Positions 24,936 to 47,343 of a stretch of DNA of 64,000 bases are shown piece by piece. The translations under genes and the position numbers were made by a program. Below the pieces are notes generated by a model. It was given only the letters and a program-made list of their open reading frames with translations. It searched no databases and was not told where the DNA came from. Every line of letters starts with the position of its first letter. Position 1 is the stretch's first letter. Location of the stretch: the IMG/VR virus record IMGVR_UViG_3300020188_000808, positions 124,001 through 188,000 of that record; one strand, 5' to 3'.

Positions 24936-25816
24936 AAATAAACATTGCAGAGCAAGATATTATCTTTTTAAGTTATGACGAACCTAACTGTGAAAAGAAT
25001 TTTGTTGATTTAGTTAACAAGGTTCCGTGGGCAAAACGTGTACACGGTGTAGAAGGATCAGATGCCGCACACAAAGCCTGTGCTGAATTGAGCGAAACTA
25101 AACACTTTGTTACAGTAGACGGCGATACAATTATTGACCCAGAGTTTTTAAACGTAGTACTAGACTTAGACGAATTAAAAGTTGACGATGATTATCAATT
25201 TAGTTGGTGCGGACATATTAATGTTAACGGACTAAAATATGGTAATGGCAGTTTAAAAATGTGGACTAAAGACTTTGTAAAAAATATGCAAACGCATGAA
25301 AACACAGACGGTGAAGATGATACTAGTATTGAATTTTGTTACTTTGATAATTACTATCAATTAAATGACAACTATAGTACAAGTCTTATAAATGCAACTC
25401 CACATCAAGCCTGGAGAGCAGGGTTCCGTGAAGGAGTTAAGATGAGTTTGAATAGGGGTGCTAAAGTTAAAGACCTTGCAAACGATACTTGGTGGCAAAA
25501 TTATCAACGTTTGTTGATATGGATGCAGGTTGGTGCTGATGTAGACAATGGAATATGGAGTGTAATGGGAGCAAGACAAGGTTGTTACATGACAATGTGT
25601 ACAGATTGGGACTTTGTGCAAACAAGAGATTTTATATATCTTAATAAACTGTGGGAAGAAACAAAAAATAAAGATCCATTAGTATACAGCAAAGAATTAG
25701 GTCAAAGTCTTAGTAGCGAGTGCGGATTACCTATCTCATCTACACCCTTTGACGATGAACAAAGTCATTTTTTCAAACAAGTATACATTAACACGGACAG
25801 AGTTATTCGTAAATGA
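24932..25816 (+). CDS. GT-A fold glycosyltransferase (GT2-like)
   Basis: 'DIIFLSYDE...AHKACA...FVTVDGD' DxD; 'AWRAGFREGVK'; paralog of 32620. Confidence 0.7.
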   Translation: MKINIAEQDIIFLSYDEPNCEKNFVDLVNKVPWAKRVHGVEGSDAAHKACAELSETKHFVTVDGDTIIDPEFLNVVLDLDELKVDDDYQFSWCGHINVNGLKYGNGSLKMWTKDFVKNMQTHENTDGEDDTSIEFCYFDNYYQLNDNYSTSLINATPHQAWRAGFREGVKMSLNRGAKVKDLANDTWWQNYQRLLIWMQVGADVDNGIWSVMGARQGCYMTMCTDWDFVQTRDFIYLNKLWEETKNKDPLVYSKELGQSLSSECGLPISSTPFDDEQSHFFKQVYINTDRVIRK

Positions 25817-27186
25817 GTGAATTAGAAAAAATTAAAACACTAATGCCTAAAATTGAGGATGAAACCTCTCCAACATTCTGTTTAGCAAAATGGCATCACA
25901 CAACTATCTATCTTGCAACAGGAGAAACACATAGTTGTTATCATCCTGCTCCGCATAAAATTCCTTTAGAAGAATTAGAAGGCAATCCTAGTGCGTTACA
26001 TAATACTATTGAGAAAAAAGAACAGCGTAAACAAATGCTATGCGGAGATAAACCAGACGGTTGTAGTTACTGTTGGAAAATTGAAGCAATGGGTAAAGAC
26101 TTTGTAAGTGATAGACATATTAAAACTGCAAGTATATACACACCTGAAAGAGTAGCGGAAATAAAACAAAAAGGGGCGGATTTTAACGTAAATCCTGAGT
26201 ATATTGAAATTAGTTTTAGTAATGAATGCAATTTTAAGTGTGGATACTGTCACCCTAAAGCCTCTAGTAGGTATTGGAACGAAATAAAACAACATGGACC
26301 ATACGATATGTCAAGCACACATAGACAAGACATTGATTGGTTTGAAGTACAAAAAGACGAAGACACGAATCCATACGTAAAAGCGTTTTGGGAATGGTGG
26401 CCTGAACTTAGTAAGACACTAAACATTTTGCGTATTACAGGCGGCGAACCATTGATGCATAAAAGTTTTTGGAAACTGTTAGAAAAGTTAGATAACGATC
26501 CTAAGCCACACATACAAATTGAAGTAAACAGTAACATGGGTGTTAAGCCTAAGCTAGTTGAAAGACTAACTGAAACAGTTAAGCGTTTAAAAGCAGAAGG
26601 CAAGATTAAAAGTTTTAAATTGTACACTAGTATTGATACTTGGGGACCAAGAGCAGAATATGCACGTACCGGGTTAGACATTAAGTTATGGGAACAAAAC
26701 TTAGATTATTATCTAAGCAATACAAACTGGCCTGTAACATTTATGATTACGTTTAATATATTTGGTGTAACTAGTTTTACGCAACTATTAGAAAAAATAC
26801 TAGAGTGGCGTACAAAATACAATAGTGATGACAATGCTACTCAGTGGCAACGTATTAGATTTGATACACCTCATTTAAAAGAACCAAGCATATATGACAT
26901 GAACATTTTACCTAAAGAAGAATTTATGCCGTATATGGAAAAACACTTACAATTTATTAAAGATAACCAAGACGATACTAATCGTACTAAGTTTACAGGG
27001 TTAGAATACGAAAAGTTTAAACGTGTAGTAGAGTATATGCGTACAACACATTATGAACCACGTAAGCTAGAACAAGCACGTAGAGATTTTCATAACTGGT
27101 TCAAAGAATTTGATCGTAGACGTAACTGTAATTTGGTAGAAACTTTTCCAGAACTAGAAGGCTTTTATAATGACTGCGGAAAGTAA
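25813..27186 (+). CDS. Radical SAM protein with N-terminal twitch/SPASM-like domain
   Basis: CNFKCGYC (CX3CX2C) and ITGGEP; N-terminal C..W...SCYH...CSYCW Cys cluster. Confidence 0.9.
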   Translation: MSELEKIKTLMPKIEDETSPTFCLAKWHHTTIYLATGETHSCYHPAPHKIPLEELEGNPSALHNTIEKKEQRKQMLCGDKPDGCSYCWKIEAMGKDFVSDRHIKTASIYTPERVAEIKQKGADFNVNPEYIEISFSNECNFKCGYCHPKASSRYWNEIKQHGPYDMSSTHRQDIDWFEVQKDEDTNPYVKAFWEWWPELSKTLNILRITGGEPLMHKSFWKLLEKLDNDPKPHIQIEVNSNMGVKPKLVERLTETVKRLKAEGKIKSFKLYTSIDTWGPRAEYARTGLDIKLWEQNLDYYLSNTNWPVTFMITFNIFGVTSFTQLLEKILEWRTKYNSDDNATQWQRIRFDTPHLKEPSIYDMNILPKEEFMPYMEKHLQFIKDNQDDTNRTKFTGLEYEKFKRVVEYMRTTHYEPRKLEQARRDFHNWFKEFDRRRNCNLVETFPELEGFYNDCGK

Positions 27187-28363
27187 TACATTTTGCATAC
27201 TTCCGTGGATTCATTTCTATGCTAATCCAGACGGCAATGTACTTCCTTGTTGTATAGGTGATTGGCGTCAACCTCTTGGCAACACACGTAAAAACACTAT
27301 TAAAGAAATATGGAATAGTGAAGAATATAAAAAATTAAGACTTGCATTATTAAACAATGAAAAGCCTAGTGCTTGTACACAATGTTGGAAACACGAAGAA
27401 GCAGGAATAGAAAGCAATAGAATTGCACAAAATAATAGATTTGCACAGCATATTAGTATAAAAGACGAAACCAATTTTGACGGTTCGTTAGATATAATGA
27501 AGTTACTATACTTTGATGTACGTTGGAGCAACATTTGTAATTTTAAATGCAGAACCTGTAGTAGTACTTACAGTTCTACATGGGCTGTAGAAGATAACAA
27601 GCAAGGTGAAAATAAACCTGTATACATTTTTGCAGGCGGAGATAACAACGATAATTTGTTTGAACAGTTTAAGCCGTACCTTAAAGGTATTCAAGATTAT
27701 TATTTTGCAGGTGGCGAGCCTCTTATTACAGATAAGCATTATGATATTTTAGATTATTTAATTGAAAATAAAAAGACTGATGCTGTACTGCAATACAACA
27801 GTAATTTAAGTAATTTATTTTTTAAGAAGAAAAGTATTACAGAGTATTGGAATAATTTTAAACACGTTGAAGTACGTGCAAGTATTGACGGCTATGGAAA
27901 CAGAGGCGAGTATATTAGAGAAGGTACTGATTGGCCAACTATAGAACAAAACTTAAAAATTATTAAAAAAGAAAGTCCGCATGTAATTATTAGTTTTAAT
28001 TGTGTAGTAAGTGCATTTAATGTATTAACACTTGTAGACTTTTTAGAATATATGTCTAGCAAAGGATTTGATGTAAACAACAGTACGCTTTATAATATTG
28101 TTGAACCTAATTACTACAGTTTTAATGCACTAACAGATGAACAAAGACAAACTGCAATAGATAAGTTACAAGCATACGCAAATACAGTAACACATACAGA
28201 ACATTTAAGATATGTAAATGGTGTTATTGATTACTTGCACAAGTCAACATTTGATCAAAGTGCAAATGATTTGTTTAAATCTAACAATATGTACTTTGAT
28301 AAAATTCGTAATCGTTCTTTTAACGAAACGTTTCCTGAACTTATTGATGTATTAACGGATTAA
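27170..28363 (+). CDS. Radical SAM protein with N-terminal twitch/SPASM-like domain
   Basis: CNFKCRTC, FAGGEP, SIDG; N-terminal CILPW..DGNVLPCC...CTQC. Confidence 0.9.
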   Translation: MTAESNTFCILPWIHFYANPDGNVLPCCIGDWRQPLGNTRKNTIKEIWNSEEYKKLRLALLNNEKPSACTQCWKHEEAGIESNRIAQNNRFAQHISIKDETNFDGSLDIMKLLYFDVRWSNICNFKCRTCSSTYSSTWAVEDNKQGENKPVYIFAGGDNNDNLFEQFKPYLKGIQDYYFAGGEPLITDKHYDILDYLIENKKTDAVLQYNSNLSNLFFKKKSITEYWNNFKHVEVRASIDGYGNRGEYIREGTDWPTIEQNLKIIKKESPHVIISFNCVVSAFNVLTLVDFLEYMSSKGFDVNNSTLYNIVEPNYYSFNALTDEQRQTAIDKLQAYANTVTHTEHLRYVNGVIDYLHKSTFDQSANDLFKSNNMYFDKIRNRSFNETFPELIDVLTD

Positions 28364-30471: not shown

Positions 30472-30485
30472 AAGGGTAACTTTCC

Positions 30486-30506
30486 ATAAATACTACTGTA
30501 TTTATA
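30486..30506. promoter_or_regulatory. Bidirectional late promoter pair (ATAAATA on +, TATAAATA on -) forming an inverted repeat
   Basis: ATAAATAC-TACT-GTATTTAT in the only gap between divergent operons; the minus-strand copy is the exact T4 late consensus. Confidence 0.65.
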
Positions 30507-30532
30507 TGCGTATATAATGATTGGAGAACATA

Positions 30533-31705
30533 GTGAAGATTGGATTTATTGGGTTAGGAAAATTAGGATTACCTTGTGCAGAAGTCATTTCAACCAAAGG
30601 GCATGATGTAACAGGTTATGATGTTACTACTGTTAAAAGTGATAGCGTAACTGTTTGTCCTACAATTAAAGATACTGTTCAAAATAGAGACATTGTATTT
30701 GTTGCAGTACCTACTCCCCATCATCCAGACTATGACGGCAAAAAACCCACAGCTCACTTAGAACCCAAAGACTTTGGTTATGATATTGTACTTGATGTAT
30801 TGCGTGAAGCAAATGCACATATGAACAACAATCAATTGCTTGTGTTAATTAGTACAGTATTACCAGGCACAGTACGCCGAGAATTTTATCCGTTAGTAAC
30901 TAATACTAGATTTGTTTATAACCCGTATCTTATTGCAATGGGAACAGTAGCATGGGATATGGTAAATCCTGAAATGGTTATGATTGGTACAGATGACGGA
31001 AGTGAAACTGGAGATGCAAAACAACTTGTAGATTTTTATAAAACTATAATGGAAAATGATCCACGCTATGAAATTGGCACTTGGGACGAATGTGAATGTA
31101 TCAAAGTATTTTATAATACATTTATCAGTGCAAAAATTGGATTGGTTAATATGATACAAGATGTTGCAGAGAAACAAGGACATATTAATGTTGATGTAGT
31201 AACTAATGCACTTGCCAAAAGCGATCAGCGTATAATGGGTCCAAGTTATATGAAAGCAGGAATGGGCGACGGAGGAGCGTGTCATCCAAGAGATAATATA
31301 GCTCTACGCTACATGGCTCAAAACTTGGGGTTGCAATATGACATATTCGATGCTATAATGAATGCAAGAGAAGTGCAGGCTAAAAATATGGCAAACTATT
31401 TGGTAAAAATTGCACAAGAGCGTAATCTACCAATTTTGCTAAATGGCATTGCATATAAACCAGGAGTACCATATACTGATGGCAGTTATTCGTTACTAGT
31501 TGGACACTACTGTAAAGAGTTAGGATATCATTGCATAGAAGTTGATCCGTTAGCAAGTCCGCAACGTGGTCCTTTTAGTGCAGTAGTACTATTAGCACAT
31601 CCTGAACTTTATTGCTTTTTAAATAAAGAAAGTGTTGTAGTTGATCCGTGGAGAGAATATAAGTCAGAAGAGGTAGAAGTATTCCATTATGGAAACACAC
31701 GATGA
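30533..31705 (+). CDS. ugd: UDP-glucose/GDP-mannose dehydrogenase family protein
   Basis: Rossmann GLGKLG, VAVPTP, ISTVLPGT, catalytic GGACHPRD, AYKP. GTG start at 30533 has a GGAG RBS (ORF track starts 30521). Confidence 0.85.
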   Translation: MKIGFIGLGKLGLPCAEVISTKGHDVTGYDVTTVKSDSVTVCPTIKDTVQNRDIVFVAVPTPHHPDYDGKKPTAHLEPKDFGYDIVLDVLREANAHMNNNQLLVLISTVLPGTVRREFYPLVTNTRFVYNPYLIAMGTVAWDMVNPEMVMIGTDDGSETGDAKQLVDFYKTIMENDPRYEIGTWDECECIKVFYNTFISAKIGLVNMIQDVAEKQGHINVDVVTNALAKSDQRIMGPSYMKAGMGDGGACHPRDNIALRYMAQNLGLQYDIFDAIMNAREVQAKNMANYLVKIAQERNLPILLNGIAYKPGVPYTDGSYSLLVGHYCKELGYHCIEVDPLASPQRGPFSAVVLLAHPELYCFLNKESVVVDPWREYKSEEVEVFHYGNTR

Positions 31706-32619: not shown

Positions 32620-33294
32620 ATGTATGATATTGTTTTTATAAGTTATGGTGAAGCAAACGCTGATAGTAATTGGGATAAACTTAAACAACAATACCCAATG
32701 GCAAAGCGTGTTAAAGATGTTAAAGGAATTCACCAAGCACACGTAGCAGGTGCTAAAAAATGTTTTACAAAAATGTTTTGGGTTGTAGATGGTGATGCTC
32801 AGATAGTAGACGATTTTAAATTTGATCACGAAGTTAGTAGTTACGATTTAGATTGTGTTCATGTGTGGAGAGCAAGAAATCCTGTTAACGGATTAGAGTA
32901 TGGATACGGTGGGGTTAAGTTATTACCACGTATGCTTACACTAAAGATGGATACTACAACAAATGATATGACTACTAGTATTAGTAATAAATTTAAAGCA
33001 ATGCCAACTGTAAGTAATATTACAGCATTTAACACAGATCCATTGAGTACATGGCGCGGCGCATTTAGAGAATGTGCAAAGTTGGCAAGTAAAACAATAC
33101 AAGGACAACTAGAGGAAGAAACAAATGATAGACTTAAAACTTGGACTACTCATGCTGATGGAATACATAGTGGATATGCGTTACGAGGTGCTAATGCTGG
33201 TATGCAGTTTGGCCTTCGTGTCGGCGCTGATTTGGGGTTAATAAATAATTTTGAATGGTTAGGAGAGCAGTTTGCAAAAGATTCCGTTTACTAA
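32620..33294 (+). CDS. GT-A fold glycosyltransferase (paralog of 24932)
   Basis: 'DIVFISYGE...AKRV..VKGIHQAH...WVVDGD...NGLEYGYGGVKL...WRGAFRECAK'. Confidence 0.7.
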   Translation: MYDIVFISYGEANADSNWDKLKQQYPMAKRVKDVKGIHQAHVAGAKKCFTKMFWVVDGDAQIVDDFKFDHEVSSYDLDCVHVWRARNPVNGLEYGYGGVKLLPRMLTLKMDTTTNDMTTSISNKFKAMPTVSNITAFNTDPLSTWRGAFRECAKLASKTIQGQLEEETNDRLKTWTTHADGIHSGYALRGANAGMQFGLRVGADLGLINNFEWLGEQFAKDSVY

Positions 33295-34231
33295 AATCGT
33301 ATCTTTAGGACAAAAAACAATGTTAAACAATCCGTTGTTTAATGTTAGCTGGATCCTTGGAAGGTTTTGTAATTATAAATGTAGTTACTGTTGGCCTTAT
33401 GCAAACACAGATAAGCCAGATCATCAAGACTTTGAAGTATACACAAACGCAATTGATGAAATTAAACGTCAAGCAAGAGACAATGGCTTTACACAATTTC
33501 ATTTTAGTTTTAGCGGTGGCGAACCAACAGCATATAAAAAGTTCGGGGAACTTATAGAGTATTATTGCAGTGATGCAACACCCGAATACCAAAGTTTGCA
33601 TATGACTACAAACCTAAGCCCAGGAAGCAAGTGGTGGAACAATTGGTTAGAAGCAACTAATAATTTGCAACGTAGAAGTATTACAGCAAGTTTTCATGCA
33701 GAGTTTGCTAACGAACAAGAGTTTGGAGACAAGTGTCTTCAACTTATGAAAGCAGGAGTACTTGTAACTATTAATCAAGTTATGGTACCAGAACTATGGG
33801 ATGAATATTATGAAAGAAGTTTACGATTTATTAAAAGAGGAATACACGTTACTCTTAAGCCGCAATCAGATCCTACTGCGTCATTTGTGGTCAGTGGTTA
33901 CACGGAAGAACAAACAAAAATCCTCCAAACAGATTCAGAACAAACAATCCCGCAAGTACTCCTCAAAGACTATCAAGGAATAGCTTACGAACTTGATCAA
34001 GCAGAACGATTAAATGCTTTTGGGTTTAACAAATTTAAAGGATGGAGTTGTAACGCAGGATATCAAAGTTGTATTATCCGCGGCGATGAAGTTAAAAGAG
34101 CTTATAGTTGTAGCGATGAACCTCTAGGTACGCTACAGGACGGGTTTACGCTGTTTAAGACACCAACTAGTTGCATAACTGATACATGTGTTAGTAGTGC
34201 TGACAACAAGATACCCAAGGAAAACAAATGA
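33272..34231 (+). CDS. Radical SAM protein with C-terminal Cys-rich domain
   Basis: CNYKCSYC, FSGGEPT; C-terminal FKGWSCNAG...C...C..C; TTG start with GGAG RBS. Confidence 0.9.
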   Translation: MQKIPFTKIVSLGQKTMLNNPLFNVSWILGRFCNYKCSYCWPYANTDKPDHQDFEVYTNAIDEIKRQARDNGFTQFHFSFSGGEPTAYKKFGELIEYYCSDATPEYQSLHMTTNLSPGSKWWNNWLEATNNLQRRSITASFHAEFANEQEFGDKCLQLMKAGVLVTINQVMVPELWDEYYERSLRFIKRGIHVTLKPQSDPTASFVVSGYTEEQTKILQTDSEQTIPQVLLKDYQGIAYELDQAERLNAFGFNKFKGWSCNAGYQSCIIRGDEVKRAYSCSDEPLGTLQDGFTLFKTPTSCITDTCVSSADNKIPKENK

Positions 34232-34542
34232 AGAAGTTATGGGAACGCTATAAGGCGCATGATAAAAAAGTAACAGAAGCACAAAAAAATTTTAAAGTGT
34301 CTGACATAGAGAACAAATACGTGAGAGCATTCATGTGGATCTTTATGTTAAAATTTGTATGGGACATTACTACAGTATTTGAAAAGTATTTGCCTATGCC
34401 AACAGTATATAAAATACTAGGATTGGGATGGACAAAGTTAGGTTATTATGTGTTTTGGGTATTATGGTTTATATTCATAGTTGTGTTATTATATAACATA
34501 CTAGGCGAAGAAGCGTTTGATCAATTGGTAAATGAATTATGA
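34228..34542 (+). CDS. Small membrane protein (about 2 TM helices)
   Basis: Hydrophobic stretches AFMWIFMLKFVW and YYVFWVLWFIFIVVLLYNIL; coupled on both sides. Confidence 0.6.
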   Translation: MKKLWERYKAHDKKVTEAQKNFKVSDIENKYVRAFMWIFMLKFVWDITTVFEKYLPMPTVYKILGLGWTKLGYYVFWVLWFIFIVVLLYNILGEEAFDQLVNEL

Positions 34543-38013: not shown

Positions 38014-38699
38014 ACAAACTAATTTGGAAACATATTGACTATAATAACGACAGTCTTAATAGTATAGCAAGAAATATTGCAGAGTATCATACTGCTCATG
38101 CACTAAAAGTTAAGTACTCTACAATTAAAGGAGTACCGCTAGGAACTATTTTCTTAGATGACACACATACAGTTGAAAATATCAGTGTGTTAAATAGTAT
38201 TTTAAATTATAATGTATATTTTAAAAAGAATACCGAAGTACCGTTAAAAACAATAATTGATCTTGATTGTGTTGTTGCGTTAGCAAGTGGAGACACTCCA
38301 AGTCAGTTACCAGCCAAACATACATATGTTATTGACATTAGTCCAATGGCACTAGAAAAAACAAAAGAAAAATATAATATAGATGTAGATAAGAGTTACA
38401 AATACGACCAAGTTGATTTATTTGATATACCAGCTGTAAAAAAGTTTTTAACAAAATGCCAAGGTAACGTAGGATTATTTTGTTTAAGTAATGTGTTTTT
38501 ATACTTTCCTAATTGCGTAATGTTTGATGCAAAGGCAAGACTTAAAAAACAAAATGAATTAATTAGTTTATTAGCACAAGATAAAATCAAATGGTATGTT
38601 GATATGGTAACAGTCAACGGAACACATATTCAAACACTAGCAAGTGAATTAGTAGACATGCCGTTAGACGATAAATTTAAGGTATTGCCATGGATCTAG
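38010..38699 (+). CDS. Hypothetical protein, methyltransferase-like fold
   Basis: 'ALASG..P...YVIDISPMAL...VDLFD...CLSNVF' pattern, similar to the C-terminal half of 48083. Confidence 0.4.
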   Translation: MNKLIWKHIDYNNDSLNSIARNIAEYHTAHALKVKYSTIKGVPLGTIFLDDTHTVENISVLNSILNYNVYFKKNTEVPLKTIIDLDCVVALASGDTPSQLPAKHTYVIDISPMALEKTKEKYNIDVDKSYKYDQVDLFDIPAVKKFLTKCQGNVGLFCLSNVFLYFPNCVMFDAKARLKKQNELISLLAQDKIKWYVDMVTVNGTHIQTLASELVDMPLDDKFKVLPWI

Positions 38700-39334
38700 T
38701 AGAAAAATTTAATTGGATTAGACACAACAGTGGCCTTGCTACACTTCTGTTAGATATTCCAAAGCCTACAAATGATATTAGAGATGAAATATTAAAAAGT
38801 GTTGATATTGCTGTTCCTCACAGGGATACTGACGGCAAAGGTTGGCGCAGTTTAACACTTCATGGACATAGTTCTGTAATGACTGATAGTGATGATGCTT
38901 ACAAAGAAAAAGGATTTACATTAGGTACCAAAGAATGGACTGATGTAGCAAAGCACTTTCCGTTAACCAAACAATGGATTATTAAAAATATACCTTTTGA
39001 AAAGTACGGAAGAATTAGAATAATGATAGTTGACCCAGGCGGGTATGTTAGTCCACACAAAGACTTTTTACATGGACAATTACTAGGCGGAATTAATATT
39101 GCTATTACACACCCCAAAGAAGTAGTGTTTGATATTGAGAATTATGGCAATGTAGAATGGCAAGAAGGTGAATCAAGACTGATTGATTTAGGAAGTGTGC
39201 ACCAAATTACAAACAACAGTAGTGAATCTAGGATACATATTATTGTACATAGTGAACCAATTGATAAGTGGAATAAAAAAATTATGCAACTAGTCTGCAA
39301 CAGTTACGACAAGGTATATAATGGAACAAAATAA
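38690..39334 (+). CDS. Aspartyl/asparaginyl beta-hydroxylase-like 2OG-Fe(II) oxygenase
   Basis: PGGYVSPHKD (HxD), distal H in VHQITN, RIHIIVH. Confidence 0.85.
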   Translation: MDLVEKFNWIRHNSGLATLLLDIPKPTNDIRDEILKSVDIAVPHRDTDGKGWRSLTLHGHSSVMTDSDDAYKEKGFTLGTKEWTDVAKHFPLTKQWIIKNIPFEKYGRIRIMIVDPGGYVSPHKDFLHGQLLGGINIAITHPKEVVFDIENYGNVEWQEGESRLIDLGSVHQITNNSSESRIHIIVHSEPIDKWNKKIMQLVCNSYDKVYNGTK

Positions 39335-39977
39335 TATTGAAAGAGCATTGCTATGGAATAGTCTATGTAATTTAGGCGACATGGTAAAATTAAAGCTAAA
39401 AGTTAACGGGCATGAGCTTGTACAGCAATTAGAGCAGTTTGAAGATAACTGGTGTCCTTACAACCAAAAAAAAGATGCTCACAACAATCGATGGGGATTA
39501 CCTGTAACAAGTCATACAGGTGATGTAATGGACAACTATCATTTGAATAGCTTTGGCCATATGCAACGATATCACGATGTTGAGATGAAAGAAGAAAACT
39601 TTACAACACCAACAGAAGTGTATAACAAAATTCCACAACTTGCTAGTCTTGTAGATGCGTTTGCACCTGACATTGGCCGAGTGCATTTACTTAGAGTAGA
39701 TGAAGGTGGGTTCTTTCCGCCGCACAGAGACTTTCCAGGAGTAGGACCAGAGTACTTTAGATTGTTATGTACATTTGGCAAAGCACAACCAGAAAACTAT
39801 GCACATATACTTGACAAGCAATTAATTTATCCTGATCCAGAGTATGTACATTTTATTAACTTTCAAAAAGAACATAGTGTGTTTAGTTACACTAACGGAT
39901 TATATTCTTTAATACTTACAGTTAAACTAAATCAACGCACACACGATTTAATTATTAAGAATAGCATGAGCGAATGA
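39321..39977 (+). CDS. 2OG-Fe(II) oxygenase (Asp/Asn beta-hydroxylase-like)
   Basis: GGFFPPHRD (HxD), distal EHSV. Confidence 0.75.
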   Translation: MEQNNIERALLWNSLCNLGDMVKLKLKVNGHELVQQLEQFEDNWCPYNQKKDAHNNRWGLPVTSHTGDVMDNYHLNSFGHMQRYHDVEMKEENFTTPTEVYNKIPQLASLVDAFAPDIGRVHLLRVDEGGFFPPHRDFPGVGPEYFRLLCTFGKAQPENYAHILDKQLIYPDPEYVHFINFQKEHSVFSYTNGLYSLILTVKLNQRTHDLIIKNSMSE

Positions 39978-40909
39978 AGCTAGATTATCAAGATAAAACA
40001 AAAGAAGATTGGTTCTTAGTTAGTTGGACATTAAGTAATAAATGTAATTACAAATGTTCTTACTGCCCGGATATATTACACAACGGAACTACAGGACAGC
40101 CCAAATGGGAAACTGTTAAAAACTTTGTCGAAAATTTTAAAGTACCTTCTAAAGAAATTTGTTACAGACTTAGTGGCGGAGAACCTACTTATTGGAAACA
40201 CTTTATTGATCTTGCAAAACTTGTTAAGGAACAAGGACACACATTTAGTTTTGTTACAAACGGTAGCCAATCAGTTGAATATTTTCAAAAGATAGATCCA
40301 TATACTGATGGTATGCTTATGAGTTATCATCCAGAGTATTCTTCTTCACAACATTTTGTAGATATTGCAAACGCAACATCGTGTGAAATTATTGTTAATT
40401 TAATGTTACCTCCTGGAAAAGAATCATTTGAAGAACAGTATAAAATAGCACAATACTTGTTTGATAGAACAGATAGGATGTCAATATATCCTAAAGTTAT
40501 TTTAGATAAAACAGACGGTGAACATATTACTAATGCAGTAGCACCTTATAGTAGTGAACAAAAAGAAATCATCGGTGCTTGGCCGTTTGCAAGAGAAGTT
40601 AATGATGAGAAGTTACACCGTGGAGATCTTAAACTTGATAACAATCTTATTACAGCAAATGATTTAATTATGTCTGGTATGAATAATTTTGCTGGTTGGA
40701 AATGTTGGGCAGGCGTTGACGGAATAAACATTGACATGTGGGGCAACATGTATAGAGCAGATTGTCAGTTTGGTGGACCAATAGGAAATATGGAAAGATA
40801 TAAACTACCAACTGAGCCTATTACATGCGGAAAAACTGTGTGCGGATGTTTGAGTGATATATACATACGTAAGGACCGCGGAGATAGACAAAGCAGAATT
40901 GAAGCATGA
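39974..40909 (+). CDS. Radical SAM protein with C-terminal Cys-rich domain (paralog of 33272)
   Basis: VSW.L...CNYKCSYC, LSGGEPT, FAGWKCWAG...C...CGKTVCGC. Confidence 0.9.
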   Translation: MKLDYQDKTKEDWFLVSWTLSNKCNYKCSYCPDILHNGTTGQPKWETVKNFVENFKVPSKEICYRLSGGEPTYWKHFIDLAKLVKEQGHTFSFVTNGSQSVEYFQKIDPYTDGMLMSYHPEYSSSQHFVDIANATSCEIIVNLMLPPGKESFEEQYKIAQYLFDRTDRMSIYPKVILDKTDGEHITNAVAPYSSEQKEIIGAWPFAREVNDEKLHRGDLKLDNNLITANDLIMSGMNNFAGWKCWAGVDGINIDMWGNMYRADCQFGGPIGNMERYKLPTEPITCGKTVCGCLSDIYIRKDRGDRQSRIEA

Positions 40910-41454
40910 AAATAATTATAACAGGCAATCCTAATTATGAAGGTCTTTGCAAAGGCCTATATGAAGCGTACAATGGTAACCAATTAGAATTTATTGGTAG
41001 ACACAATGGTTGGGATATGCAAGACTTAGATGCTGTTGCAGATTATATAAAAGACTATGACGTATTTGTAAACAGTTTGTTAATACCAGATAACGGTCAA
41101 GAAAAATTGTTGCATAAAGTTTACAAAACTTTCAAAGGGTCACATATAATTAACATTTCTAGTACAACAAGTTATTGGGGTGACGGTTATAGTCCAAAAG
41201 GATATCTTGAAAGTAAAACTGCACTAGATGAAGCAAGTAAAACATATTCACAATATTGTGCGTTTGGTGATAGCAAAATTCGTGTAAGCAATATTGCGTT
41301 TGGACAACTTGATTCTAAAAAAGTAAATGACAACAGTGATCGTAAGAAGATTAGTTTGCTTGATGCAGGTAAACTTATTAAGTGGTTAATTGATAGCCCA
41401 CGTAATACAAATATTCATTACCTTGCAGTTGATCCTATTCAAACAACTCTTTAA
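40906..41454 (+). CDS. Short-chain dehydrogenase/reductase (SDR)-like protein
   Basis: IIITG, DVFVN, IINISS, YLESK (YxxxK). Confidence 0.75.
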   Translation: MKIIITGNPNYEGLCKGLYEAYNGNQLEFIGRHNGWDMQDLDAVADYIKDYDVFVNSLLIPDNGQEKLLHKVYKTFKGSHIINISSTTSYWGDGYSPKGYLESKTALDEASKTYSQYCAFGDSKIRVSNIAFGQLDSKKVNDNSDRKKISLLDAGKLIKWLIDSPRNTNIHYLAVDPIQTTL

Positions 41455-42556
41455 GCTCTGGACAGTAGTTTAATACGTTTTCATTTCTAAGTTTATCTAA
41501 GTCTTTTGTATACTTAACAAATAACTCTAACTGTTTGCTATCGTCTTTGCTAGTATAATTTATATTAGGAAATCTAAAATCAATTTTGTCTAAAATGTTG
41601 TTAGGTAAAATCTGTGGATTTAAATATGCTGGTTGTGCAACTACATTATTAAAATAAATTGACCAGTTATCTTTTTTGTTTTCTTCAAACCACCAATACA
41701 ATTTATCCAAGTGTGAAATGTTATACGCCATAACTGTAACAGCAATAATTACTCTATCAAAGTTATAGTGTTTTAAATTTTCATTTAGTTGTGCAAATGT
41801 AAAGTTCTTACCACCTCTAATGTATTCGTATAATCCGTCAGTGCCTTCTACGCTCACAGTCCATTTAGTATGACCAAATTGTTTTGCAAGTGCGTGTACT
41901 TCTTCATCTACAATAGTACCATTAGTGGTCCAGTCAAGTGTAATATTTTGTGCAATACCTAAGTCAATAAACTTCTGTAATATTTTTTTATTTGCAGGCT
42001 CCATGTAAGGTTCGCCACCTTTAATACTTAGGTAACGTAAATTCATTAATGGAGTAGGGTCTTCAAACAGTCGCTCTATAATTTGTTCGCTTTTGTTAGT
42101 ATAACCAAATTCTGGATGGTCTACTGGACGTTGATAATCACTGTCCAAATTAGCTAGTTTAATTTCATCTTTAACCCAAGCACTAGAACTAATACCATTA
42201 CACATGCGACATTTCAAATTACAAATATTACTCATATTAAACTCCAAAAAGTAGATATCTGTGAAGTTTTTTGAGTAGTCGTAATTGGTATTTTCTAACA
42301 TTGGATTGAGTATGTCACGAAAGAATAAACGCCTGCTATGACCTACAGAACCTTCTTTTAAAGCACATTGTACACACTCGGGCGGTAACACTCCATTACG
42401 GATACTATCCTTTGTGTATGACGCTGTAATGCTGTTTAAGACGGTGTTTAACGGCGATTTAAGCACGTTACCATAACGCTCTTTGTACACTCCGTCGGGT
42501 ACAATATCACCATTAAAGCGTACCAAAATACTATGCCAAGGAGCGTAACATTTCAT
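41435..42556 (-). CDS. Radical SAM protein with degenerate N-terminal twitch-like domain
   Basis: CNLKCRMC, IKGGEP; N-terminal CYAPW..GDIVPDG (CC replaced)...CVQC. Confidence 0.9.
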   Translation of the reverse strand: MKCYAPWHSILVRFNGDIVPDGVYKERYGNVLKSPLNTVLNSITASYTKDSIRNGVLPPECVQCALKEGSVGHSRRLFFRDILNPMLENTNYDYSKNFTDIYFLEFNMSNICNLKCRMCNGISSSAWVKDEIKLANLDSDYQRPVDHPEFGYTNKSEQIIERLFEDPTPLMNLRYLSIKGGEPYMEPANKKILQKFIDLGIAQNITLDWTTNGTIVDEEVHALAKQFGHTKWTVSVEGTDGLYEYIRGGKNFTFAQLNENLKHYNFDRVIIAVTVMAYNISHLDKLYWWFEENKKDNWSIYFNNVVAQPAYLNPQILPNNILDKIDFRFPNINYTSKDDSKQLELFVKYTKDLDKLRNENVLNYCPELKELFE

Positions 42557-44880: not shown

Positions 44881-45316
44881 ATTTATCTCCAAATGCACTT
44901 TTTAAGTCTGAATGTAACTTAGTCATAATTTGTTCTTCACTGTATAAGCCAACGTTATCCCAGTCAACCATGTACATGTTATCACCGTCGATCATAATAT
45001 TACTTAGCACCCAATCAAAGTGTGCATATGGACTAGTTTCGTTGATAGTAAAAATACAAAAATCATAAATCTTTTTTATAAACTGCGGAGTATGTGCAAA
45101 TTTACTTGCAGGTGTACCAGGAACTTTGTGATACTCAATAAACATTTTGTCATCTTTGATACCCCAGTCAATTACCCAACCCTCCATAACTTCACCTAGT
45201 ATGATAATATGTTCTTCAAGTCTTTCTTGATCAATTATAGTCCACTCTTTACGAAACCTATCTTCAAGTTCAAAAACTTTTCTGCCTATTTCTTTATTTT
45301 CTTTAATCAATTCCAT
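44861..45316 (-). CDS. Small protein-kinase-like (APH/RIO-type) phosphotransferase
   Basis: HFDWVLSNIM (HxDxxxxN) and MVDWD metal-binding motif; about 151 aa. Confidence 0.65.
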   Translation of the reverse strand: MELIKENKEIGRKVFELEDRFRKEWTIIDQERLEEHIIILGEVMEGWVIDWGIKDDKMFIEYHKVPGTPASKFAHTPQFIKKIYDFCIFTINETSPYAHFDWVLSNIMIDGDNMYMVDWDNVGLYSEEQIMTKLHSDLKSAFGDKFDPASL

Positions 45317-46376
45317 ATGCTTGTGCAACCTCCGGCAAGTAATCTTTAATATATAGTTTACGCCAATTATCTTGTTTTGTTATTTGTCTTATGAAGTGTT
45401 CAATAATTTTTGGATCACTAGGATGATTTGCCCATTGATCAACATCTGGGTGTATTCCTTTGAACTGTTCTTTTAAAACAGTTGGAGCATTTTTAACATG
45501 TAACCATTCTGGTAATATTAATAAATTATCGTACAATTTAAAATTATTTGTTTCTGCATACTCTTTAATTTCGTTATAGTACAATGCATTAAGAATACTA
45601 AGTGTTGGAGTTACGTCAACCTTACAAAAGTCTGCATACTTTTGTGCATTAACTTCTATCTCGCTCCATTTACTTCCACTTCTAATATAATCAATTTTAT
45701 TACTTGCGGCATCTAAACTAAGACTCATGATTACCATATTAAATCTTCTTAATAGTTTTTCAATCTTAGGGTTCCATATAGTTCCGTTAGTATTAAATCT
45801 AACTAACACGCTAGGATCAAGTCTTTCTAAAAACTTGTCTAAGTGTCTAACCATCATAGGTTCACCACCTGTTAGATAAACTTCTCTAATAGGTAAGTCG
45901 TCGAATTTTTTCATTGTTTCTTCCGAAGCCCAATTAAAGTTTGGAACTTCAAGTACTCCGTGCAACGGAACAATGCCAGCTTTTTTCATTTCAATAGCTT
46001 CTTCAGCAATACTACTACTGCTCATTTCCCAACAGCTAACACATTTAAGATTACAGCTATTACCAAATCTAATATCAAGATGACTTATTCCAGGACCAAA
46101 GAAATTCCTAACGTATCTAGTACCGTCTGGTTTTACCCTAGTACGCATACTGTCAATACCTTGTAGTTCTTGTAGTTCGCAACGTGTACAAGCATCAGGC
46201 CATTCACCTTTTAACATTTGCATTCTTGTTTTTTTATGAAAATCGCTGTCATGCCATTCTTGTGGAGTGTGTGTTTTAATATTTTCTTTATTATTTTGTT
46301 CAAGGCTAACACAACACAAACGATATTGCCCATCTGATCGCACACACACTTGATTGTCTAAGTACTTACATTTCAC
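45303..46376 (-). CDS. Radical SAM protein with N-terminal twitch/SPASM-like domain
   Basis: CNLKCVSC, LTGGEP; N-terminal C...DGQYRLCC...CTRC. Confidence 0.9.
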   Translation of the reverse strand: MKCKYLDNQVCVRSDGQYRLCCVSLEQNNKENIKTHTPQEWHDSDFHKKTRMQMLKGEWPDACTRCELQELQGIDSMRTRVKPDGTRYVRNFFGPGISHLDIRFGNSCNLKCVSCWEMSSSSIAEEAIEMKKAGIVPLHGVLEVPNFNWASEETMKKFDDLPIREVYLTGGEPMMVRHLDKFLERLDPSVLVRFNTNGTIWNPKIEKLLRRFNMVIMSLSLDAASNKIDYIRSGSKWSEIEVNAQKYADFCKVDVTPTLSILNALYYNEIKEYAETNNFKLYDNLLILPEWLHVKNAPTVLKEQFKGIHPDVDQWANHPSDPKIIEHFIRQITKQDNWRKLYIKDYLPEVAQAYGID

Positions 46377-47343
46377 CGCAGGTTACCTCACATATTTTAA
46401 ATCTGTTTTTACTTGGCATTAATAATTCTTCACCTTCAATTATATCTGTTAGTGACTTATCATTTACGTTAGGCCATACAACATCTTTTTGTTGTTTAGC
46501 ATATGGACTATTAATGTCTTTAGGCCAACGGTCACTTAGTAAGTAACAACACGGTAATACTTCACCTACATGGTTTATTTGTATTTTTCTTTTGTTCTGC
46601 CATTTGCATTTAATAGTAGTGTCACTAAAGTCTTTAATTTTTTCTAATCGTTCAATATGATCAAGATGTTTACTATCATATTTAATTACACGAGCTTTGT
46701 CCTTTTTATTTTCTTTAAATTTTTCAATAGCATTATCAACCATACTATTAAGAGCAGTAAATGCAAATCCACCATTGACATCAAACTTTAAAAAGCCCAT
46801 GTCTTTAGATAGTTGTTCACATTCTTCTAACTGGTGTGCATTATGATCAAATACTAGCATACGCCAACGTGCTTTACCACCAGCTTGTATAAATGCTTTG
46901 GCATTGTTCATAATACGTTCCCATATAACACCTCGTCTATACAAGTGATTAGTATCTTCTAATCCGTCTATACTCCAAGTAATGCCACTAGGTTGTTTAA
47001 ACTTCTTTAATACATTTGCTAGTGCAACGTATTGTTCTGGCACACCTATACCACCGTTAGTATGAATCATAATTTGTATATCTTCTGAAGCGGCATATTC
47101 GAGTGCTTCAACTAGTATAGGATTCATTAACGGATCTCCATAACTACCATTAAATATTATTTCATTAGTAGTAGCATTATCTATGATATTTTTCCATGTT
47201 TTCATAGTCATATGGCTTAATGGCATTAAAGGATTTACCTTAACACCACCTAGATTCCTACTACAATTTCCGCACATAGAATTACAATGACTTGTAAAAT
47301 CTACTACAATCGCATCTAAGGTATTAGCTGTTAGGTATGGCAT
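46366..47343 (-). CDS. Radical SAM protein with C-terminal SPASM/twitch domain (paralog of 35143)
   Basis: CNSMCGNC, GSYGDP, HTNG, IDGLEDT, CEQLSKDMGF; GEVLPCC...CEVTC. Start at ATG 47343, since the track's 47448 would overlap the divergent gene. Confidence 0.9.
   Translation of the reverse strand: MPYLTANTLDAIVVDFTSHCNSMCGNCSRNLGGVKVNPLMPLSHMTMKTWKNIIDNATTNEIIFNGSYGDPLMNPILVEALEYAASEDIQIMIHTNGGIGVPEQYVALANVLKKFKQPSGITWSIDGLEDTNHLYRRGVIWERIMNNAKAFIQAGGKARWRMLVFDHNAHQLEECEQLSKDMGFLKFDVNGGFAFTALNSMVDNAIEKFKENKKDKARVIKYDSKHLDHIERLEKIKDFSDTTIKCKWQNKRKIQINHVGEVLPCCYLLSDRWPKDINSPYAKQQKDVVWPNVNDKSLTDIIEGEELLMPSKNRFKICEVTCGEM

What the first reader, a model, noticed from the sequence alone, without database searches (positions are those of the whole stretch)
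25813..47343. Nine radical SAM enzymes in three paralogous sub-families, five with the twitch/SPASM-like domain at the N-terminus
All nine have an intact CX3CX2C. Type A (25813, 27170, 36134, 41435, 45303): Cys-rich twitch-like domain placed before the rSAM core, the reverse of the canonical C-terminal SPASM arrangement. Type B (33272, 39974): VSWxLxxxCNYKCSYC with a C-terminal FxGWxCxAG. Type C (35143, 46366): share HTNG, IDGLEDT and WxMLVFxHNxHQxxxCEQLSKDMGF. The A+B+C set occurs twice (33-37 kb and 40-47 kb), suggesting duplicated multi-enzyme modules acting on different substrates. Established: twitch-type rSAMs include the sugar/aminocyclitol dehydrogenase BtrN, and SPASM enzymes include peptide/protein modifiers; either fits a GT-rich locus. 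Substrates are unknown.
Basis: partly seen in the sequence, partly recalled or inferred. Interest (0 to 1): 0.78.

Follow-up and report, generated by a model that had tools for sequence, protein, structure and literature searches.

The report
Nine radical-SAM genes in phage fibre island
A marine jumbo phage carries nine intact radical-SAM enzyme genes of three families just after its tail-fibre genes, among sugar-transferring and sugar-tailoring enzymes; the same gene set also occurs in predatory Bdellovibrio-type bacteria, and its chemistry is unknown but most likely modifies sugars.

Summary
The window holds exactly nine CX3CX2C motifs in long ORFs, all in the nine genes named. BLAST and a tree split them into three families.

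- **Type A (five genes):** they belong to the curated but uncharacterised NCBIfam family NF033640 (N_Twi_rSAM), which has a twitch domain before the radical-SAM core.
- **Type C (two genes):** they carry a twitch-like domain with five invariant Cys at the C-terminus.
- **Type B (two genes):** they have a C-terminal triad of invariant Cys.

None of the nine reaches the cutoff of MoaA, QueE, NrdG, viperin, the anaerobic sulfatase maturase or any RiPP maturase. All nine are under purifying selection (dN/dS 0.04-0.20).

The window is a jumbo phage contig of at least 268 kb. The genes lie in an island after a baseplate gene, a 4937-aa ORF and tail-fibre genes. The island also holds GT8-like and GT-A-fold transferases, a UDP-sugar dehydrogenase, a methyltransferase-fold protein and PF05118 oxygenases.

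The B1-C1-A3 trio and its accessory genes recur in related phages and in Bdellovibrionota chromosomes beside GT2, PMT_2 and UDP-sugar dehydrogenase genes. Ralstonia phage RsoM2USA has a one-rSAM core version.

My best reading is radical tailoring of sugars in a phage glycosylation pathway (confidence 0.5). The "duplicated module" idea is only partly supported.

The parts
25813..27186 (+). A1, N-terminal-twitch radical SAM (457 aa); CNFKCGYC at residue 139
   Evidence: NF033640 scores 329 bits against a cutoff of 170. Motif found. The orthologue in Ralstonia phage RsoM2USA (ORF349) is 38% identical. dN/dS 0.04.
27170..28363 (+). A2, N-terminal-twitch radical SAM (397 aa)
   Evidence: Pfam SPASM matches residues 9-73 with E 2.6e-15. 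NF033640 scores 387 bits. Twitch Cys at 9, 27/28, 69 and 72.
33272..34231 (+). B1, radical SAM with a C-terminal triad of invariant Cys (319 aa)
   Evidence: Pfam Radical_SAM E 1.1e-12. C260, C301 and C306 are invariant in 16 of 16 family members. Bdellovibrionota homologues are 46-59% identical and lie next to A3- and C1-like genes.
35143..36141 (+). C1, radical SAM with a C-terminal twitch-like domain (332 aa)
   Evidence: Pfam SPASM matches residues 236-313. Invariant Cys at 236, 255, 256, 312 and 316.
36134..37435 (+). A3, N-terminal-twitch radical SAM (433 aa)
   Evidence: NF033640 scores 418 bits. The AlphaFold2 model has pLDDT 94.5 and pTM 0.92. Orthologues of 66-100% identity occur on 49 viral contigs.
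39974..40909 (+). B2, radical SAM of type B (311 aa)
   Evidence: Pfam Radical_SAM E 5.5e-10. 24% identical to B1, E 6e-16.
41435..42556 (-). A4, N-terminal-twitch radical SAM (373 aa) whose twitch domain lacks the CC pair
   Evidence: NF033640 scores 223 bits. It has DG where orthologues have CC or DC.
45303..46376 (-). A5, N-terminal-twitch radical SAM (357 aa)
   Evidence: NF033640 scores 228 bits. Twitch Cys at 3, 21/22, 63 and 66.
46366..47343 (-). C2, radical SAM with a C-terminal twitch-like domain (about 325 aa from the ATG at 47343)
   Evidence: Pfam Radical_SAM and SPASM both match. 30% identical to C1, E 2e-39. Start codon read.
22677..24351 (+). Two GT8-like (glycogenin-like) GT-A glycosyltransferase paralogues (22677-23525 and 23518-24351)
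   Evidence: A profile of the family matches glycogenin-1 with E 1.6e-6. The pair is syntenic in RsoM2USA, L045 and L056.
24932..25816 (+). GT-A-fold protein with an invariant DxD motif, immediately upstream of A1
   Evidence: The AlphaFold2 model has pLDDT 86. Its best PDB matches are the PBCV-1 capsid glycosyltransferase A64R and the ThuS/SunS S-glycosyltransferases, at E about 1e-4. DxD is invariant.
32620..33294 (+). Paralogue of 24932 (GT-A-like), immediately upstream of B1
   Evidence: 28% identical to 24932, E 1.5e-16. Homologues lie next to rSAM arrays in phages and Bdellovibrionota.
30521..31705 (+). UDP-glucose/GDP-mannose dehydrogenase-family protein
   Evidence: Pfam UDPG_MGDP_dh central domain E 5e-18 and N-terminal domain E 1.6e-17.
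34539..35150 (+). Class I SAM methyltransferase-fold protein between B1 and C1
   Evidence: The model of its own Atlas cluster matches class I methyltransferases at TM 0.72-0.77. It co-occurs with the arrays in phages and Bdellovibrionota. It has no Pfam or PDB sequence match.
40906..41454 (+). Short-chain dehydrogenase-like protein after B2
   Evidence: A Bdellovibrionota homologue matches adh_short weakly, E 3.5e-5. It recurs with the arrays in 11 genome loci.
38690..39334 (+). PF05118 Asp/Asn beta-hydroxylase-like cupin oxygenase. One of six Pfam-confirmed paralogues (the others at 47383, 49552, 50598, 51146 and 53146); 39321 is linked by BLAST only.
   Evidence: Pfam E values from 1e-6 to 2e-12. 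Paralogy shown.
21389..22282 (+). Fibre-like protein that opens the conserved core (fibre-like, small ORF, two GT8-like genes)
   Evidence: Homologues sit in the same position in RsoM2USA, L045, L056 and L106. Weak match to a PHROG tail protein family.

Best explanation
The nine genes encode active radical SAM enzymes of three old paralogous families. Each has a CX3CX2C cluster that binds SAM and a second Cys-rich domain that probably holds an auxiliary iron-sulfur cluster. That domain is an N-terminal twitch in type A, a C-terminal twitch in type C and a C-terminal Cys triad in type B.

They sit in the host-recognition (baseplate and tail-fibre) region of a marine jumbo phage. I propose they are tailoring enzymes of a phage-encoded glycosylation pathway. 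In this model a UDP-sugar dehydrogenase-family enzyme supplies an activated sugar. GT8-like and GT-A-fold transferases attach sugars to a soluble acceptor, most plausibly virion fibre or baseplate proteins. The radical SAM enzymes then abstract hydrogen atoms from sugar carbons to epimerise, oxidise, dehydrate or C-alkylate individual residues, and the auxiliary cluster handles the extra electron, as in BtrN-type enzymes. A methyltransferase-fold protein, an SDR-like protein and PF05118 oxygenases would add further decorations.

Shown here:
- the genes are intact and under selection;
- they form three families;
- the domain order is as described;
- none belongs to a characterised equivalog family;
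- they co-locate with sugar enzymes in phages and in Bdellovibrionota.

Inferred, not shown: sugar as the substrate, the reaction types, the virion as the target, and actual binding of the auxiliary cluster.
For: 1. The enzymes look functional.
- All nine keep CX3CX2C. All five type A keep GGEP, and the GGE motif is invariant across 16 type B relatives.
- dN/dS is 0.04-0.20 against a related phage.
- The twitch Cys are conserved in 99-102 of 102 relatives.

2. The window itself points to glycans.
- Two GT8-like genes match glycogenin, E 1.6e-6.
- Two GT-A-fold DxD proteins have the PBCV-1 capsid glycosyltransferase as their best PDB match.
- The island also holds a UDP-Glc/GDP-Man dehydrogenase-family protein, a class I methyltransferase-fold protein and an SDR-like protein.

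3. Relatives of type A elsewhere sit in glycan contexts.
- A bacterial MAG has an array of rSAM genes that starts with a sugar nucleotidyltransferase (PF00483) and ends with GDSL and AsnB genes.
- Another locus has a NodU/CmcH carbamoyltransferase, PMT_2 and GDSL genes.
- Fusions occur to an FkbM methyltransferase and to a carbamoyltransferase.
- In Bdellovibrionota chromosomes the neighbours include GT2, PMT_2, UDP-sugar dehydrogenase, SIS and AsnB genes.

4. The unit GT-A-like + methyltransferase-fold + rSAM is conserved, from RsoM2USA (one rSAM) to 13 rSAM genes in L057.

5. Peptide substrates look unlikely. No PqqD/RRE domain was found, and the tightly packed island has no intergenic room for small precursor genes.

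6. A cytoplasmic acceptor is likely. No polytopic membrane protein (Wzx, Wzy or WecA type) was seen in the island (a crude scan).

7. The setting matches a published description. The island follows the baseplate, giant ORF and fibre genes, like the 'host recognition cluster' of marine myophages, which was reported to hold GT8, UDP-Glc dehydrogenase and radical SAM cassettes (PMC7029224).
Against: - No member of types A, B or C has a characterised relative. The best PDB matches cover only the generic core (anSME Z 12.9, BlsE 12.6, CteB, viperin), and they include both peptide-modifying and sugar- or nucleotide-modifying enzymes.
- The glycosyltransferase assignments are weak: E 1e-4 to 1e-6, TM 0.3-0.44.
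- Some relatives are fused to TPR repeats, which more often signals protein partners.
- PF05118 enzymes are classically protein or lipid A hydroxylases.
- Nine to thirteen radical SAM enzymes in one glycan pathway has no precedent that I know of.
- No glycan, glycoprotein or expression data exist for this phage.
Confidence: 0.5

Rival explanations
1. The enzymes modify proteins directly. On this reading the radical SAM enzymes, the PF05118 hydroxylases and the halogenase-like flavoprotein install cross-links, epimerised residues, hydroxyl groups or halogens on the phage's own structural proteins: the giant 4937-aa protein, the fibres or the beta-propeller-like proteins encoded between the rSAM genes.
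For: - The nearest solved cores include the protein and peptide modifiers anSME, CteB, SkfB, SuiB and EpeE.
- PF05118 is named for Asp/Asn hydroxylation of proteins.
- Some relatives carry TPR fusions.
- The genes lie among structural genes, and Kelch-like repeat proteins (42531, 43654, 51893) are interleaved with them.
- anSME shows that a protein-modifying enzyme of this subgroup needs no RRE domain (established knowledge).
Against: - No RRE domain was found, and no repeated Cys-rich or other recognisable target motif was identified.
- The conserved partners across phages and Bdellovibrionota are GT-A-like, methyltransferase-fold, SDR-like and UDP-sugar dehydrogenase genes. They are not a conserved candidate substrate protein.
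- Bdellovibrionota arrays show no homologues of the phage fibre proteins in the +/-10 kb flanks searched.
Confidence: 0.2
2. The chemistry is glycan chemistry, but the target is the host envelope. The island would remodel host LPS or capsule sugars during infection to block superinfection by competing phages. This is what was proposed for the glycosyltransferases of pelagimyophage host-recognition clusters.
For: - PMC7029224 interprets the GT8 and UDP-Glc dehydrogenase genes of such islands as O-chain modification.
- GT8 includes LPS glycosyltransferases (established knowledge).
- The cellular homologues sit in loci that look like surface-glycan loci, with PMT_2, GT2 and AsnB genes.
Against: - The island encodes no flippase, polymerase or polyprenyl-phosphate transferase, and only one small hydrophobic protein.
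- The genes follow the structural genes on the same strand with overlapping stops and starts. That suggests co-expression with virion genes rather than early host takeover (inference).
- The best structural match of the GT-A-like protein is a capsid-glycosylating enzyme.
Confidence: 0.15
3. The island makes a ribosomal peptide (RiPP) or another diffusible secondary metabolite, with the radical SAM enzymes as maturases.
For: - SPASM/twitch enzymes are typical RiPP maturases.
- 2OG hydroxylases and halogenases are common RiPP or NRPS tailoring enzymes (established knowledge).
- NCBIfam gives weak partial hits to many RiPP maturase models.
Against: - Every such hit is far below its cutoff: 15-45 bits against cutoffs of 265-850.
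- No RRE/PqqD domain, protease, transporter or small precursor ORF was found, and the island has no intergenic space for one.
- The only small ORF (34228, 104 aa) looks like a membrane protein and is missing from several relatives.
Confidence: 0.07
4. The island hypermodifies phage DNA, with radical SAM chemistry and glycosyl transfer acting on bases.
For: Radical SAM enzymes and glycosyltransferases take part in known phage DNA hypermodification pathways (from memory of the thymidine-hypermodification and 7-deazaguanine literature; papers listed).
Against: - QueE models score 22-32 bits against cutoffs of 206-260.
- No DNA-binding domain, base-kinase or nucleotide-metabolism gene was seen in the island.
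- The island lies in the structural module.
- The homologous arrays in Bdellovibrionota sit in surface-glycan-like loci.
Confidence: 0.05

Closest known systems
NCBIfam NF033640 (N_Twi_rSAM, 'twitch domain-containing radical SAM protein')
   Same: All five type A proteins score 223-418 bits against a cutoff of 170 over the full model. They share the Cys, beta-hairpin, CC, helices, CxxC N-terminal domain followed by CX3CX2C and GGEP.
   Different: The family is only a curated sequence model and no member has a known reaction. A4 of this window has lost one cluster ligand position. Here five divergent members (22-28% identical) sit in one phage locus.
BtrN, BlsE and other twitch-domain radical SAM enzymes that act on sugars and aminocyclitols
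   Same: They have a radical SAM core plus a single auxiliary-cluster domain with four Cys. The Cys spacing in type A (C-x17-C(C)-x40-56-C-x2-C) resembles what I recall for BtrN. BlsE is among the best core matches, Z 12.6. The neighbouring genes act on sugars.
   Different: In BtrN and BlsE the twitch domain follows the barrel (PMC9477430); in type A it comes first. No sequence-level relation was detected: the PDB sequence search found nothing and BtrN is not in the top 50 Foldseek rows.
anSME and the SPASM peptide maturases (CteB, SkfB, SuiB)
   Same: They give the best structural matches to the A3 core: anSME Z 12.9 and CteB Z 12.5. The Pfam SPASM model matches types A and C.
   Different: Only residues about 125-400 align. 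The proteins here have no 7-8 Cys SPASM motif, no RRE domain and no peptide precursor gene. Scores against those families' models are far below cutoff.
Host recognition cluster of marine T4-like myophages (pelagimyophages and cyanomyophages; PMC7029224)
   Same: It is a variable island after the giant baseplate protein and the tail fibres, and it contains GT8 glycosyltransferases, UDP-glucose dehydrogenase, Asp/Asn beta-hydroxylase-like genes and 'radical SAM cassettes'.
   Different: Here the genome is a jumbo phage of at least 268 kb with nine radical SAM genes. The published description gives the cassettes no family assignment or function. Homology of the 4937-aa ORF to VrlC, and the downstream boundary of the island, were not tested.
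Virus-encoded virion glycosylation (chlorovirus PBCV-1 A64R and related systems)
   Same: The GT-A-fold protein upstream of A1 has A64R, the PBCV-1 capsid glycosyltransferase, as its best PDB match. All the enzymes look soluble, which fits cytoplasmic glycosylation of virion proteins.
   Different: The match is weak (E about 1e-4, TM 0.3-0.44). As far as I know, radical SAM enzymes are not part of the described chlorovirus pathway.

Membership tests
Radical SAM superfamily (PF04055) | CX3CX2C motif that binds the [4Fe-4S] cluster, within a partial TIM-barrel core | tested here: met
   The motif is present in all nine. PF04055 matches all nine; seven reach the gathering score and two (A2, C1) fall just below it. 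The A3 model core aligns to anSME, BlsE and viperin at Z 12-13.
Radical SAM superfamily (PF04055) | Reductive cleavage of SAM to the 5'-deoxyadenosyl radical | not testable with these tools
   This needs anaerobic reconstitution and a 5'-deoxyadenosine assay.
NCBIfam NF033640 N_Twi_rSAM | Full-length HMM score at or above the curated cutoff (170 bits) | tested here: met
   A1 329, A2 387, A3 418, A4 223 and A5 228 bits. Types B and C score 24-52 bits and are not members.
NCBIfam NF033640 N_Twi_rSAM | Twitch-type Cys set N-terminal to the radical SAM motif | tested here: met
   C6, C24(C25), C82 and C85 (A3 numbering) are conserved in 99-102 of 102 relatives. A1, A2, A3 and A5 have the complete set. 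A4 has three Cys, with DG in place of CC.
SPASM/twitch subgroup (SFLD subgroup 17) | Auxiliary-cluster domain located C-terminal to the barrel | tested here: not met
   Not met for type A, where the domain is at residues about 1-95, before the core. Met for type C, where SPASM matches residues 236-313 and 281-357. The definition is taken from PMC9477430.
SPASM/twitch subgroup (SFLD subgroup 17) | Seven or eight conserved Cys binding two auxiliary clusters (a full SPASM domain) | tested here: not met
   Type C has five invariant C-terminal Cys and type A has four or five N-terminal Cys. Both counts fit a twitch domain.
Housekeeping radical SAM equivalogs (MoaA, QueE, NrdG activase) | Score at or above the equivalog cutoff | tested here: not met
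   MoaA scores at most 42 bits against a cutoff of 284, QueE at most 32 against 206-260, and NrdG at most 36 against 131.
Viperin-like enzymes (NF038283); considered for type B | Score at or above the cutoff (180 bits), plus the C-terminal nucleotide-binding region | tested here: not met
   B1 scores 39 bits and B2 47 bits, and only the N-terminal part of each (to about residue 97-114) aligns.
Anaerobic sulfatase-maturating enzyme (TIGR03942) | Score at or above the cutoff (349 bits) | tested here: not met
   The best scores are 23.8 bits (B1) and 16.7 bits (B2). The structural match is limited to the core.
RiPP radical SAM maturases | RRE/PqqD leader-binding domain and an adjacent precursor peptide gene | tested here: not met
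   No PqqD or RRE Pfam match was found in any of the nine. All maturase models score far below their cutoffs. The island is gene-dense, with no free small ORF.
Marine myophage host recognition cluster (PMC7029224) | Variable island after the giant baseplate protein, containing tail fibres, GT8, UDP-Glc dehydrogenase and radical SAM cassettes | tested here: met
   Baseplate wedge, a 4937-aa ORF and three fibre paralogues lie upstream. GT8-like genes and a UDP-sugar dehydrogenase-family gene are present.
Marine myophage host recognition cluster (PMC7029224) | Flanked by VrlC and the neck protein gp14 of a T4-like genome | not tested
   Homology of the giant ORF to VrlC and the presence of gp14 downstream were not examined.

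The most novel reading that the evidence does not exclude
Arrays of N-terminal-twitch, type B and type C radical SAM enzymes, together with their GT-A-like and methyltransferase-fold partners, form a previously undescribed assembly line. It would build a radically tailored glycan, or a glycan-protein conjugate, with chemistry not seen in known sugar pathways. This system would be shared by two kinds of bacterial predators, jumbo phages and Bdellovibrionota, and would decorate their prey-recognition surfaces.
Probability: 0.2. Interest if true: 0.85.

Novelty: new variant of a known kind. Interest (0 to 1): 0.62.

Why it matters
Type A belongs to a very large radical SAM family. A search of 1.84 billion cluster representatives found 9,353 with E up to 1e-3 and 1,513 with E up to 1e-30. 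The auxiliary-cluster domain sits on the opposite side of the core from every solved SPASM or twitch enzyme, and no member has a known reaction.

This locus, and the conserved five-gene unit shared with Bdellovibrionota, gives a defined and compact starting point for finding that reaction: B1, C1 and A3 with a GT-A-like and a methyltransferase-fold protein. A cultured phage, RsoM2USA, carries a one-enzyme version that can be tested genetically.

If the product decorates tail fibres, it would add radical chemistry to the ways phages vary or protect their host-recognition apparatus. It would also explain the 'radical SAM cassettes' already noted in marine myophage genomes.

Tried and rejected
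**Searches that found nothing useful**
- Megablast of the whole region against GenBank phages gave no match.
- tblastn of A3 against the same collection gave only 22-24% hits in Ralstonia and Vibrio jumbo phages.
- A single-protein scan of genome contigs with A3 found nothing. The family-profile scan did work.
- PDB sequence searches with A3 and C2 gave no real hit. Profiles for 24932/32620, 29188 and 34539 also gave none.
- Pfam and PHROGs left most accessory ORFs unannotated. The Bdellovibrionota versions of the accessory proteins were no more recognisable.
- Pfam on the giant ORF gave only FG-GAP and a weak CBM5/12 match, and no EGF-like hydroxylation targets.
- Literature searches found no characterised N-terminal-twitch enzyme and no report of the arrays in Bdellovibrio.
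- tRNA and Rfam scans of the window were empty.

**Steps that could not be completed**
I re-ran it without those rows.
- I could not read model coordinates. Where the N-terminal twitch packs against the barrel, and the distance between clusters, were therefore not measured.

**Ideas rejected**
- Housekeeping MoaA, QueE or NrdG roles, and membership of viperin, anSME or any named RiPP maturase family: scores are far below cutoffs.
- A recent segmental duplication of an A+B+C module.

**Left open**
- The T4-type late promoter motif TATAAATA occurs only once in the window, so it says little about expression timing.

Full report
**What the window is.** The stretch 26134-47432 is identical to IMG/VR contig UViG_3300020188_000808, which is 267,783 bp long. 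The window begins with the C-terminus of a baseplate wedge protein. A 4937-aa ORF follows, with only FG-GAP and a weak CBM5/12 match, and then three tail-fibre-like paralogues. From about 21.4 to 55.3 kb lies a tightly packed island of enzymes and unknown proteins. After it come a protein with an Mtd_N domain, an HNH endonuclease and an AAA ATPase that is 52% identical to the one in Pseudomonas phage PA5oct. No close relative is in GenBank phages. G+C content is about 33%. This is an uncultured marine jumbo myophage.

**The observation.** Pfam Radical_SAM matches all nine. Every quoted motif is present. Against the orthologues of a related phage (L018), dN/dS is 0.04-0.20 for all nine, so these are working genes.

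**Three families.** Within-type BLAST identities are 22-30%, with E from 1e-7 to 1e-54. Between types the matches are marginal. A 46-sequence maximum-likelihood tree included paralogues from five related viral contigs and the Ralstonia phage orthologue. On it each type is one side of a branch, with SH-aLRT support of 97-99, and each of the nine genes has its own orthologue group. The paralogues therefore predate this phage lineage and are not recent duplicates.

**Type A.** All five proteins are members of NCBIfam NF033640, 'N_Twi_rSAM', scoring 223-418 bits against a cutoff of 170. Pfam SPASM matches residues about 3-93 of A2, A3 and A4.
- *Conserved residues.* In an alignment of 102 relatives, the N-terminal Cys at A3 positions 6, 24(25), 82 and 85, the CX3CX2C motif and the GGEP motif are nearly invariant.
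- *Model.* An AlphaFold2 model of A3 is confident (pLDDT 94.5, pTM 0.92). Its N-terminal domain runs Cys, beta-hairpin, CC, helices, CxxC, which is twitch topology, and the barrel follows.
- *Solved structures.* Matches to solved structures cover only the core, about residues 125-400: anSME Z 12.9, BlsE 12.6, CteB 12.5, and viperin-like enzymes about 12. No solved structure has this domain order.
- *AlphaFold DB.* AlphaFold DB holds full-length look-alikes (TM 0.7-0.83), all uncharacterised.
- *Family size.* The family is very large: 9,353 of 1.84 billion cluster representatives match at E up to 1e-3, and 1,513 at E up to 1e-30. It includes tandem doubles and fusions to TPR repeats and to an FkbM methyltransferase. 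The Atlas also lists a viral carbamoyltransferase fusion.
- *A4 variant.* A4 of this window has DG where the family has CC. Its orthologues vary between CC, DC and DG.

**Types C and B.** Type C has the radical SAM motif near its N-terminus and five invariant C-terminal Cys (C-x18-CC-x55-C-x3-C). That is a twitch-like domain, not a full SPASM. Its 'GNVxPCC' segment aligns with the same segment of the type A N-terminal domain (E 8e-5 for the pair). This suggests one domain placed on either side of the core. Type B has three invariant C-terminal Cys, including the GWxC motif. Its only other similarity is weak and N-terminal, to viperin and STM4011 models: 33-47 bits against cutoffs of 180-200. 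None of the nine reaches the cutoff of any equivalog family, housekeeping or RiPP.

**Context in the window.**
- A profile of 22677 and 23518 matches glycogenin (GT8), E 1.6e-6.
- The 24932/32620 family has an invariant DxD motif. Its model (pLDDT 86) has a GT-A fold, and the PBCV-1 capsid glycosyltransferase and the glycocin S-glycosyltransferases are its best matches.
- 30521 belongs to the UDP-Glc/GDP-Man dehydrogenase family.
- 34539 has a class I methyltransferase fold, judged from the model of its own Atlas cluster.
- 40906 is SDR-like.
- Six ORFs are PF05118 cupin oxygenases, and 39321 is a seventh paralogue by BLAST only. 54142 resembles a flavin-dependent halogenase.
- Other assignments rest on motifs read by eye: SGNH-like for 28341 and 31702, kinase-like for 44861, and a CX5R phosphatase motif in 50180.
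- The island is gene-dense, with no room for small precursor genes. A crude hydropathy scan shows no polytopic membrane protein.

**Context elsewhere.** The island is syntenic in many related viral contigs, with gene gain and loss.
- *Cultured phage.* Ralstonia phage RsoM2USA (343.8 kb) has a minimal version after its own giant structural gene. It runs fibre-like, small ORF, two GT8-like genes, one gene with no match in the window, a 24932-like gene, a single A1 orthologue (38% identical), a 32620-like gene and a 34539-like gene. All of these are annotated as hypothetical in the record, and the paper does not mention radical SAM enzymes.
- *Other phage contigs.* Some carry up to 13 radical SAM genes in a row. 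They place NifU, IscA-like and ferredoxin-reductase-like genes nearby.
- *Bdellovibrionota.* A family-profile scan of species-representative genomes returned 223 hits. The best 79 loci are almost all Bdellovibrionota MAGs, including Mb-scale contigs. The scan used a single motif pattern and is therefore biased. These loci contain arrays of A-, B- and C-type genes together with homologues of 34539, 32620, 24932, 40906, 39321/47383, 48083, 29188 and 30521. About 13 loci keep the trio of A3 (43-47% identical), C1 (36-40%) and B1 (45-59%). Flanking genes include housekeeping genes, which shows a chromosomal setting. They also include GT2, PMT_2, PF05118, UDP-sugar dehydrogenase, SIS and AsnB genes. 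A few 'genome' hits (L063, L106) are clearly mis-binned phage contigs.
- *Other cellular loci.* In a bacterial MAG the array begins with a sugar nucleotidyltransferase. In another locus a type A gene lies between a carbamoyltransferase and a PMT_2 gene.

**Interpretation.** Sugar-nucleotide and glycosyl-transfer genes recur as neighbours in phages and in cells. No leader-binding domain or precursor gene is present. All the island's proteins look soluble. Together these make sugar tailoring inside a glycosylation pathway the best-supported reading. Because the island sits in the structural module, virion fibre or baseplate proteins are the most plausible acceptor. This reading is inferred, and I give it 0.5. 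Direct protein modification (0.2) and host-envelope remodelling (0.15) remain open. A RiPP or other metabolite (0.07) and DNA hypermodification (0.05) are less likely.

**Relation to what is known.** The literature defines SPASM and twitch domains as C-terminal to the barrel (PMC9477430). A study of pelagimyophages described a 'host recognition cluster' with GT8, UDP-Glc dehydrogenase and 'radical SAM cassettes', without further analysis (PMC7029224). The type of island and the type A family name are therefore already on record. Three things appear to be undescribed: the three-family composition, the conserved B1-C1-A3 unit with its partners, and its presence in Bdellovibrionota. The chemistry is unknown.

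**Limits.** I could not read model coordinates, so the position of the N-terminal twitch relative to the active site is untested. The glycosyltransferase assignments are weak. No expression, glycan or protein-mass data exist for this phage.

Noticed in passing
window 570-15383 (+), with 32-556 upstream: A single 4937-aa ORF follows the C-terminus of a baseplate wedge protein. Pfam finds only FG-GAP repeats and a weak CBM5/12 match. It may correspond to the giant VrlC baseplate protein of marine myophages, but I did not test that.
   Followed up: partly
window 16023-18053, 18053-19864, 19894-21384 (+): Three tail-fibre-like paralogues share only their N-terminal 200-320 residues (30-37% identity) and have different C-terminal parts. 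This looks like exchangeable receptor-binding cassettes.
   Followed up: no
window 38690-39334, 47383-48081, 49552-50199, 50598-51149, 51146-51874, 53146-53862 (+); 39321-39977 by BLAST only: Six to seven paralogous PF05118 (Asp/Asn beta-hydroxylase-like) cupin oxygenases lie in and just after the rSAM region. Homologues accompany the rSAM arrays in Bdellovibrionota.
   Followed up: partly
window 54142-55302 (+): A flavin-dependent halogenase-like protein sits at the end of the island (PF04820 Trp_halogenase, E 2.6e-72).
   Followed up: no
window 41435-42556 (-), N-terminal residues about 20-30: A4 has DG where 101 of 102 relatives have at least the first Cys of the CC pair in the twitch domain. 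Close orthologues carry CC, DC or DG, so one ligand position of the auxiliary cluster varies within a single orthologue group.
   Followed up: partly
window 30499-30506 (- strand): The T4-type late promoter motif TATAAATA occurs once in 64 kb, against about 14 expected. The single copy lies 28 nt upstream of the ATG of the minus-strand gene 29188-30471, in a divergent intergenic spacer.
   Followed up: partly
loci L058-L136 (genome contigs), e.g. L059, L062, L065, L069, L108, L119: Arrays of 6-10 A/B/C-type radical SAM genes, with the same accessory genes as the phage island, lie in Bdellovibrionota chromosomes next to housekeeping genes. Which way the genes moved between phages and these predators is unknown, and so is whether such bacteria are the hosts of these phages.
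   Followed up: partly
loci L056 19800-20863 and L057 1-554, 19531-20292: Other phage contigs with rSAM arrays encode NifU, IscA-like and FeS-assembly proteins and a ferredoxin-reductase-like protein nearby. This suggests the phages bring their own Fe-S cluster and electron supply. No such genes are seen in this window.
   Followed up: no
window 50180-50608 (+) and 44861-45328 (-): A small protein carries an HCxxGxxRS phosphatase motif (weak DSPc Pfam match). Another carries an HxDxxxxN...DWD kinase-like motif, read by eye only. Together they hint at phospho-transfer steps in the island.
   Followed up: no
window 56495-57868 (-): A protein has an N-terminal Mtd_N (major tropism determinant) domain and a weak chlorovirus glycoprotein repeat match. 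I did not look for a reverse transcriptase or template repeat.
   Followed up: no
window 42531-43661, 43654-44898 (-), 51893-53140 (+): Three repeat-rich proteins look like beta-propellers (one weak Kelch Pfam match; two are paralogues). They are interleaved with the rSAM genes and could be structural proteins or substrates.
   Followed up: no
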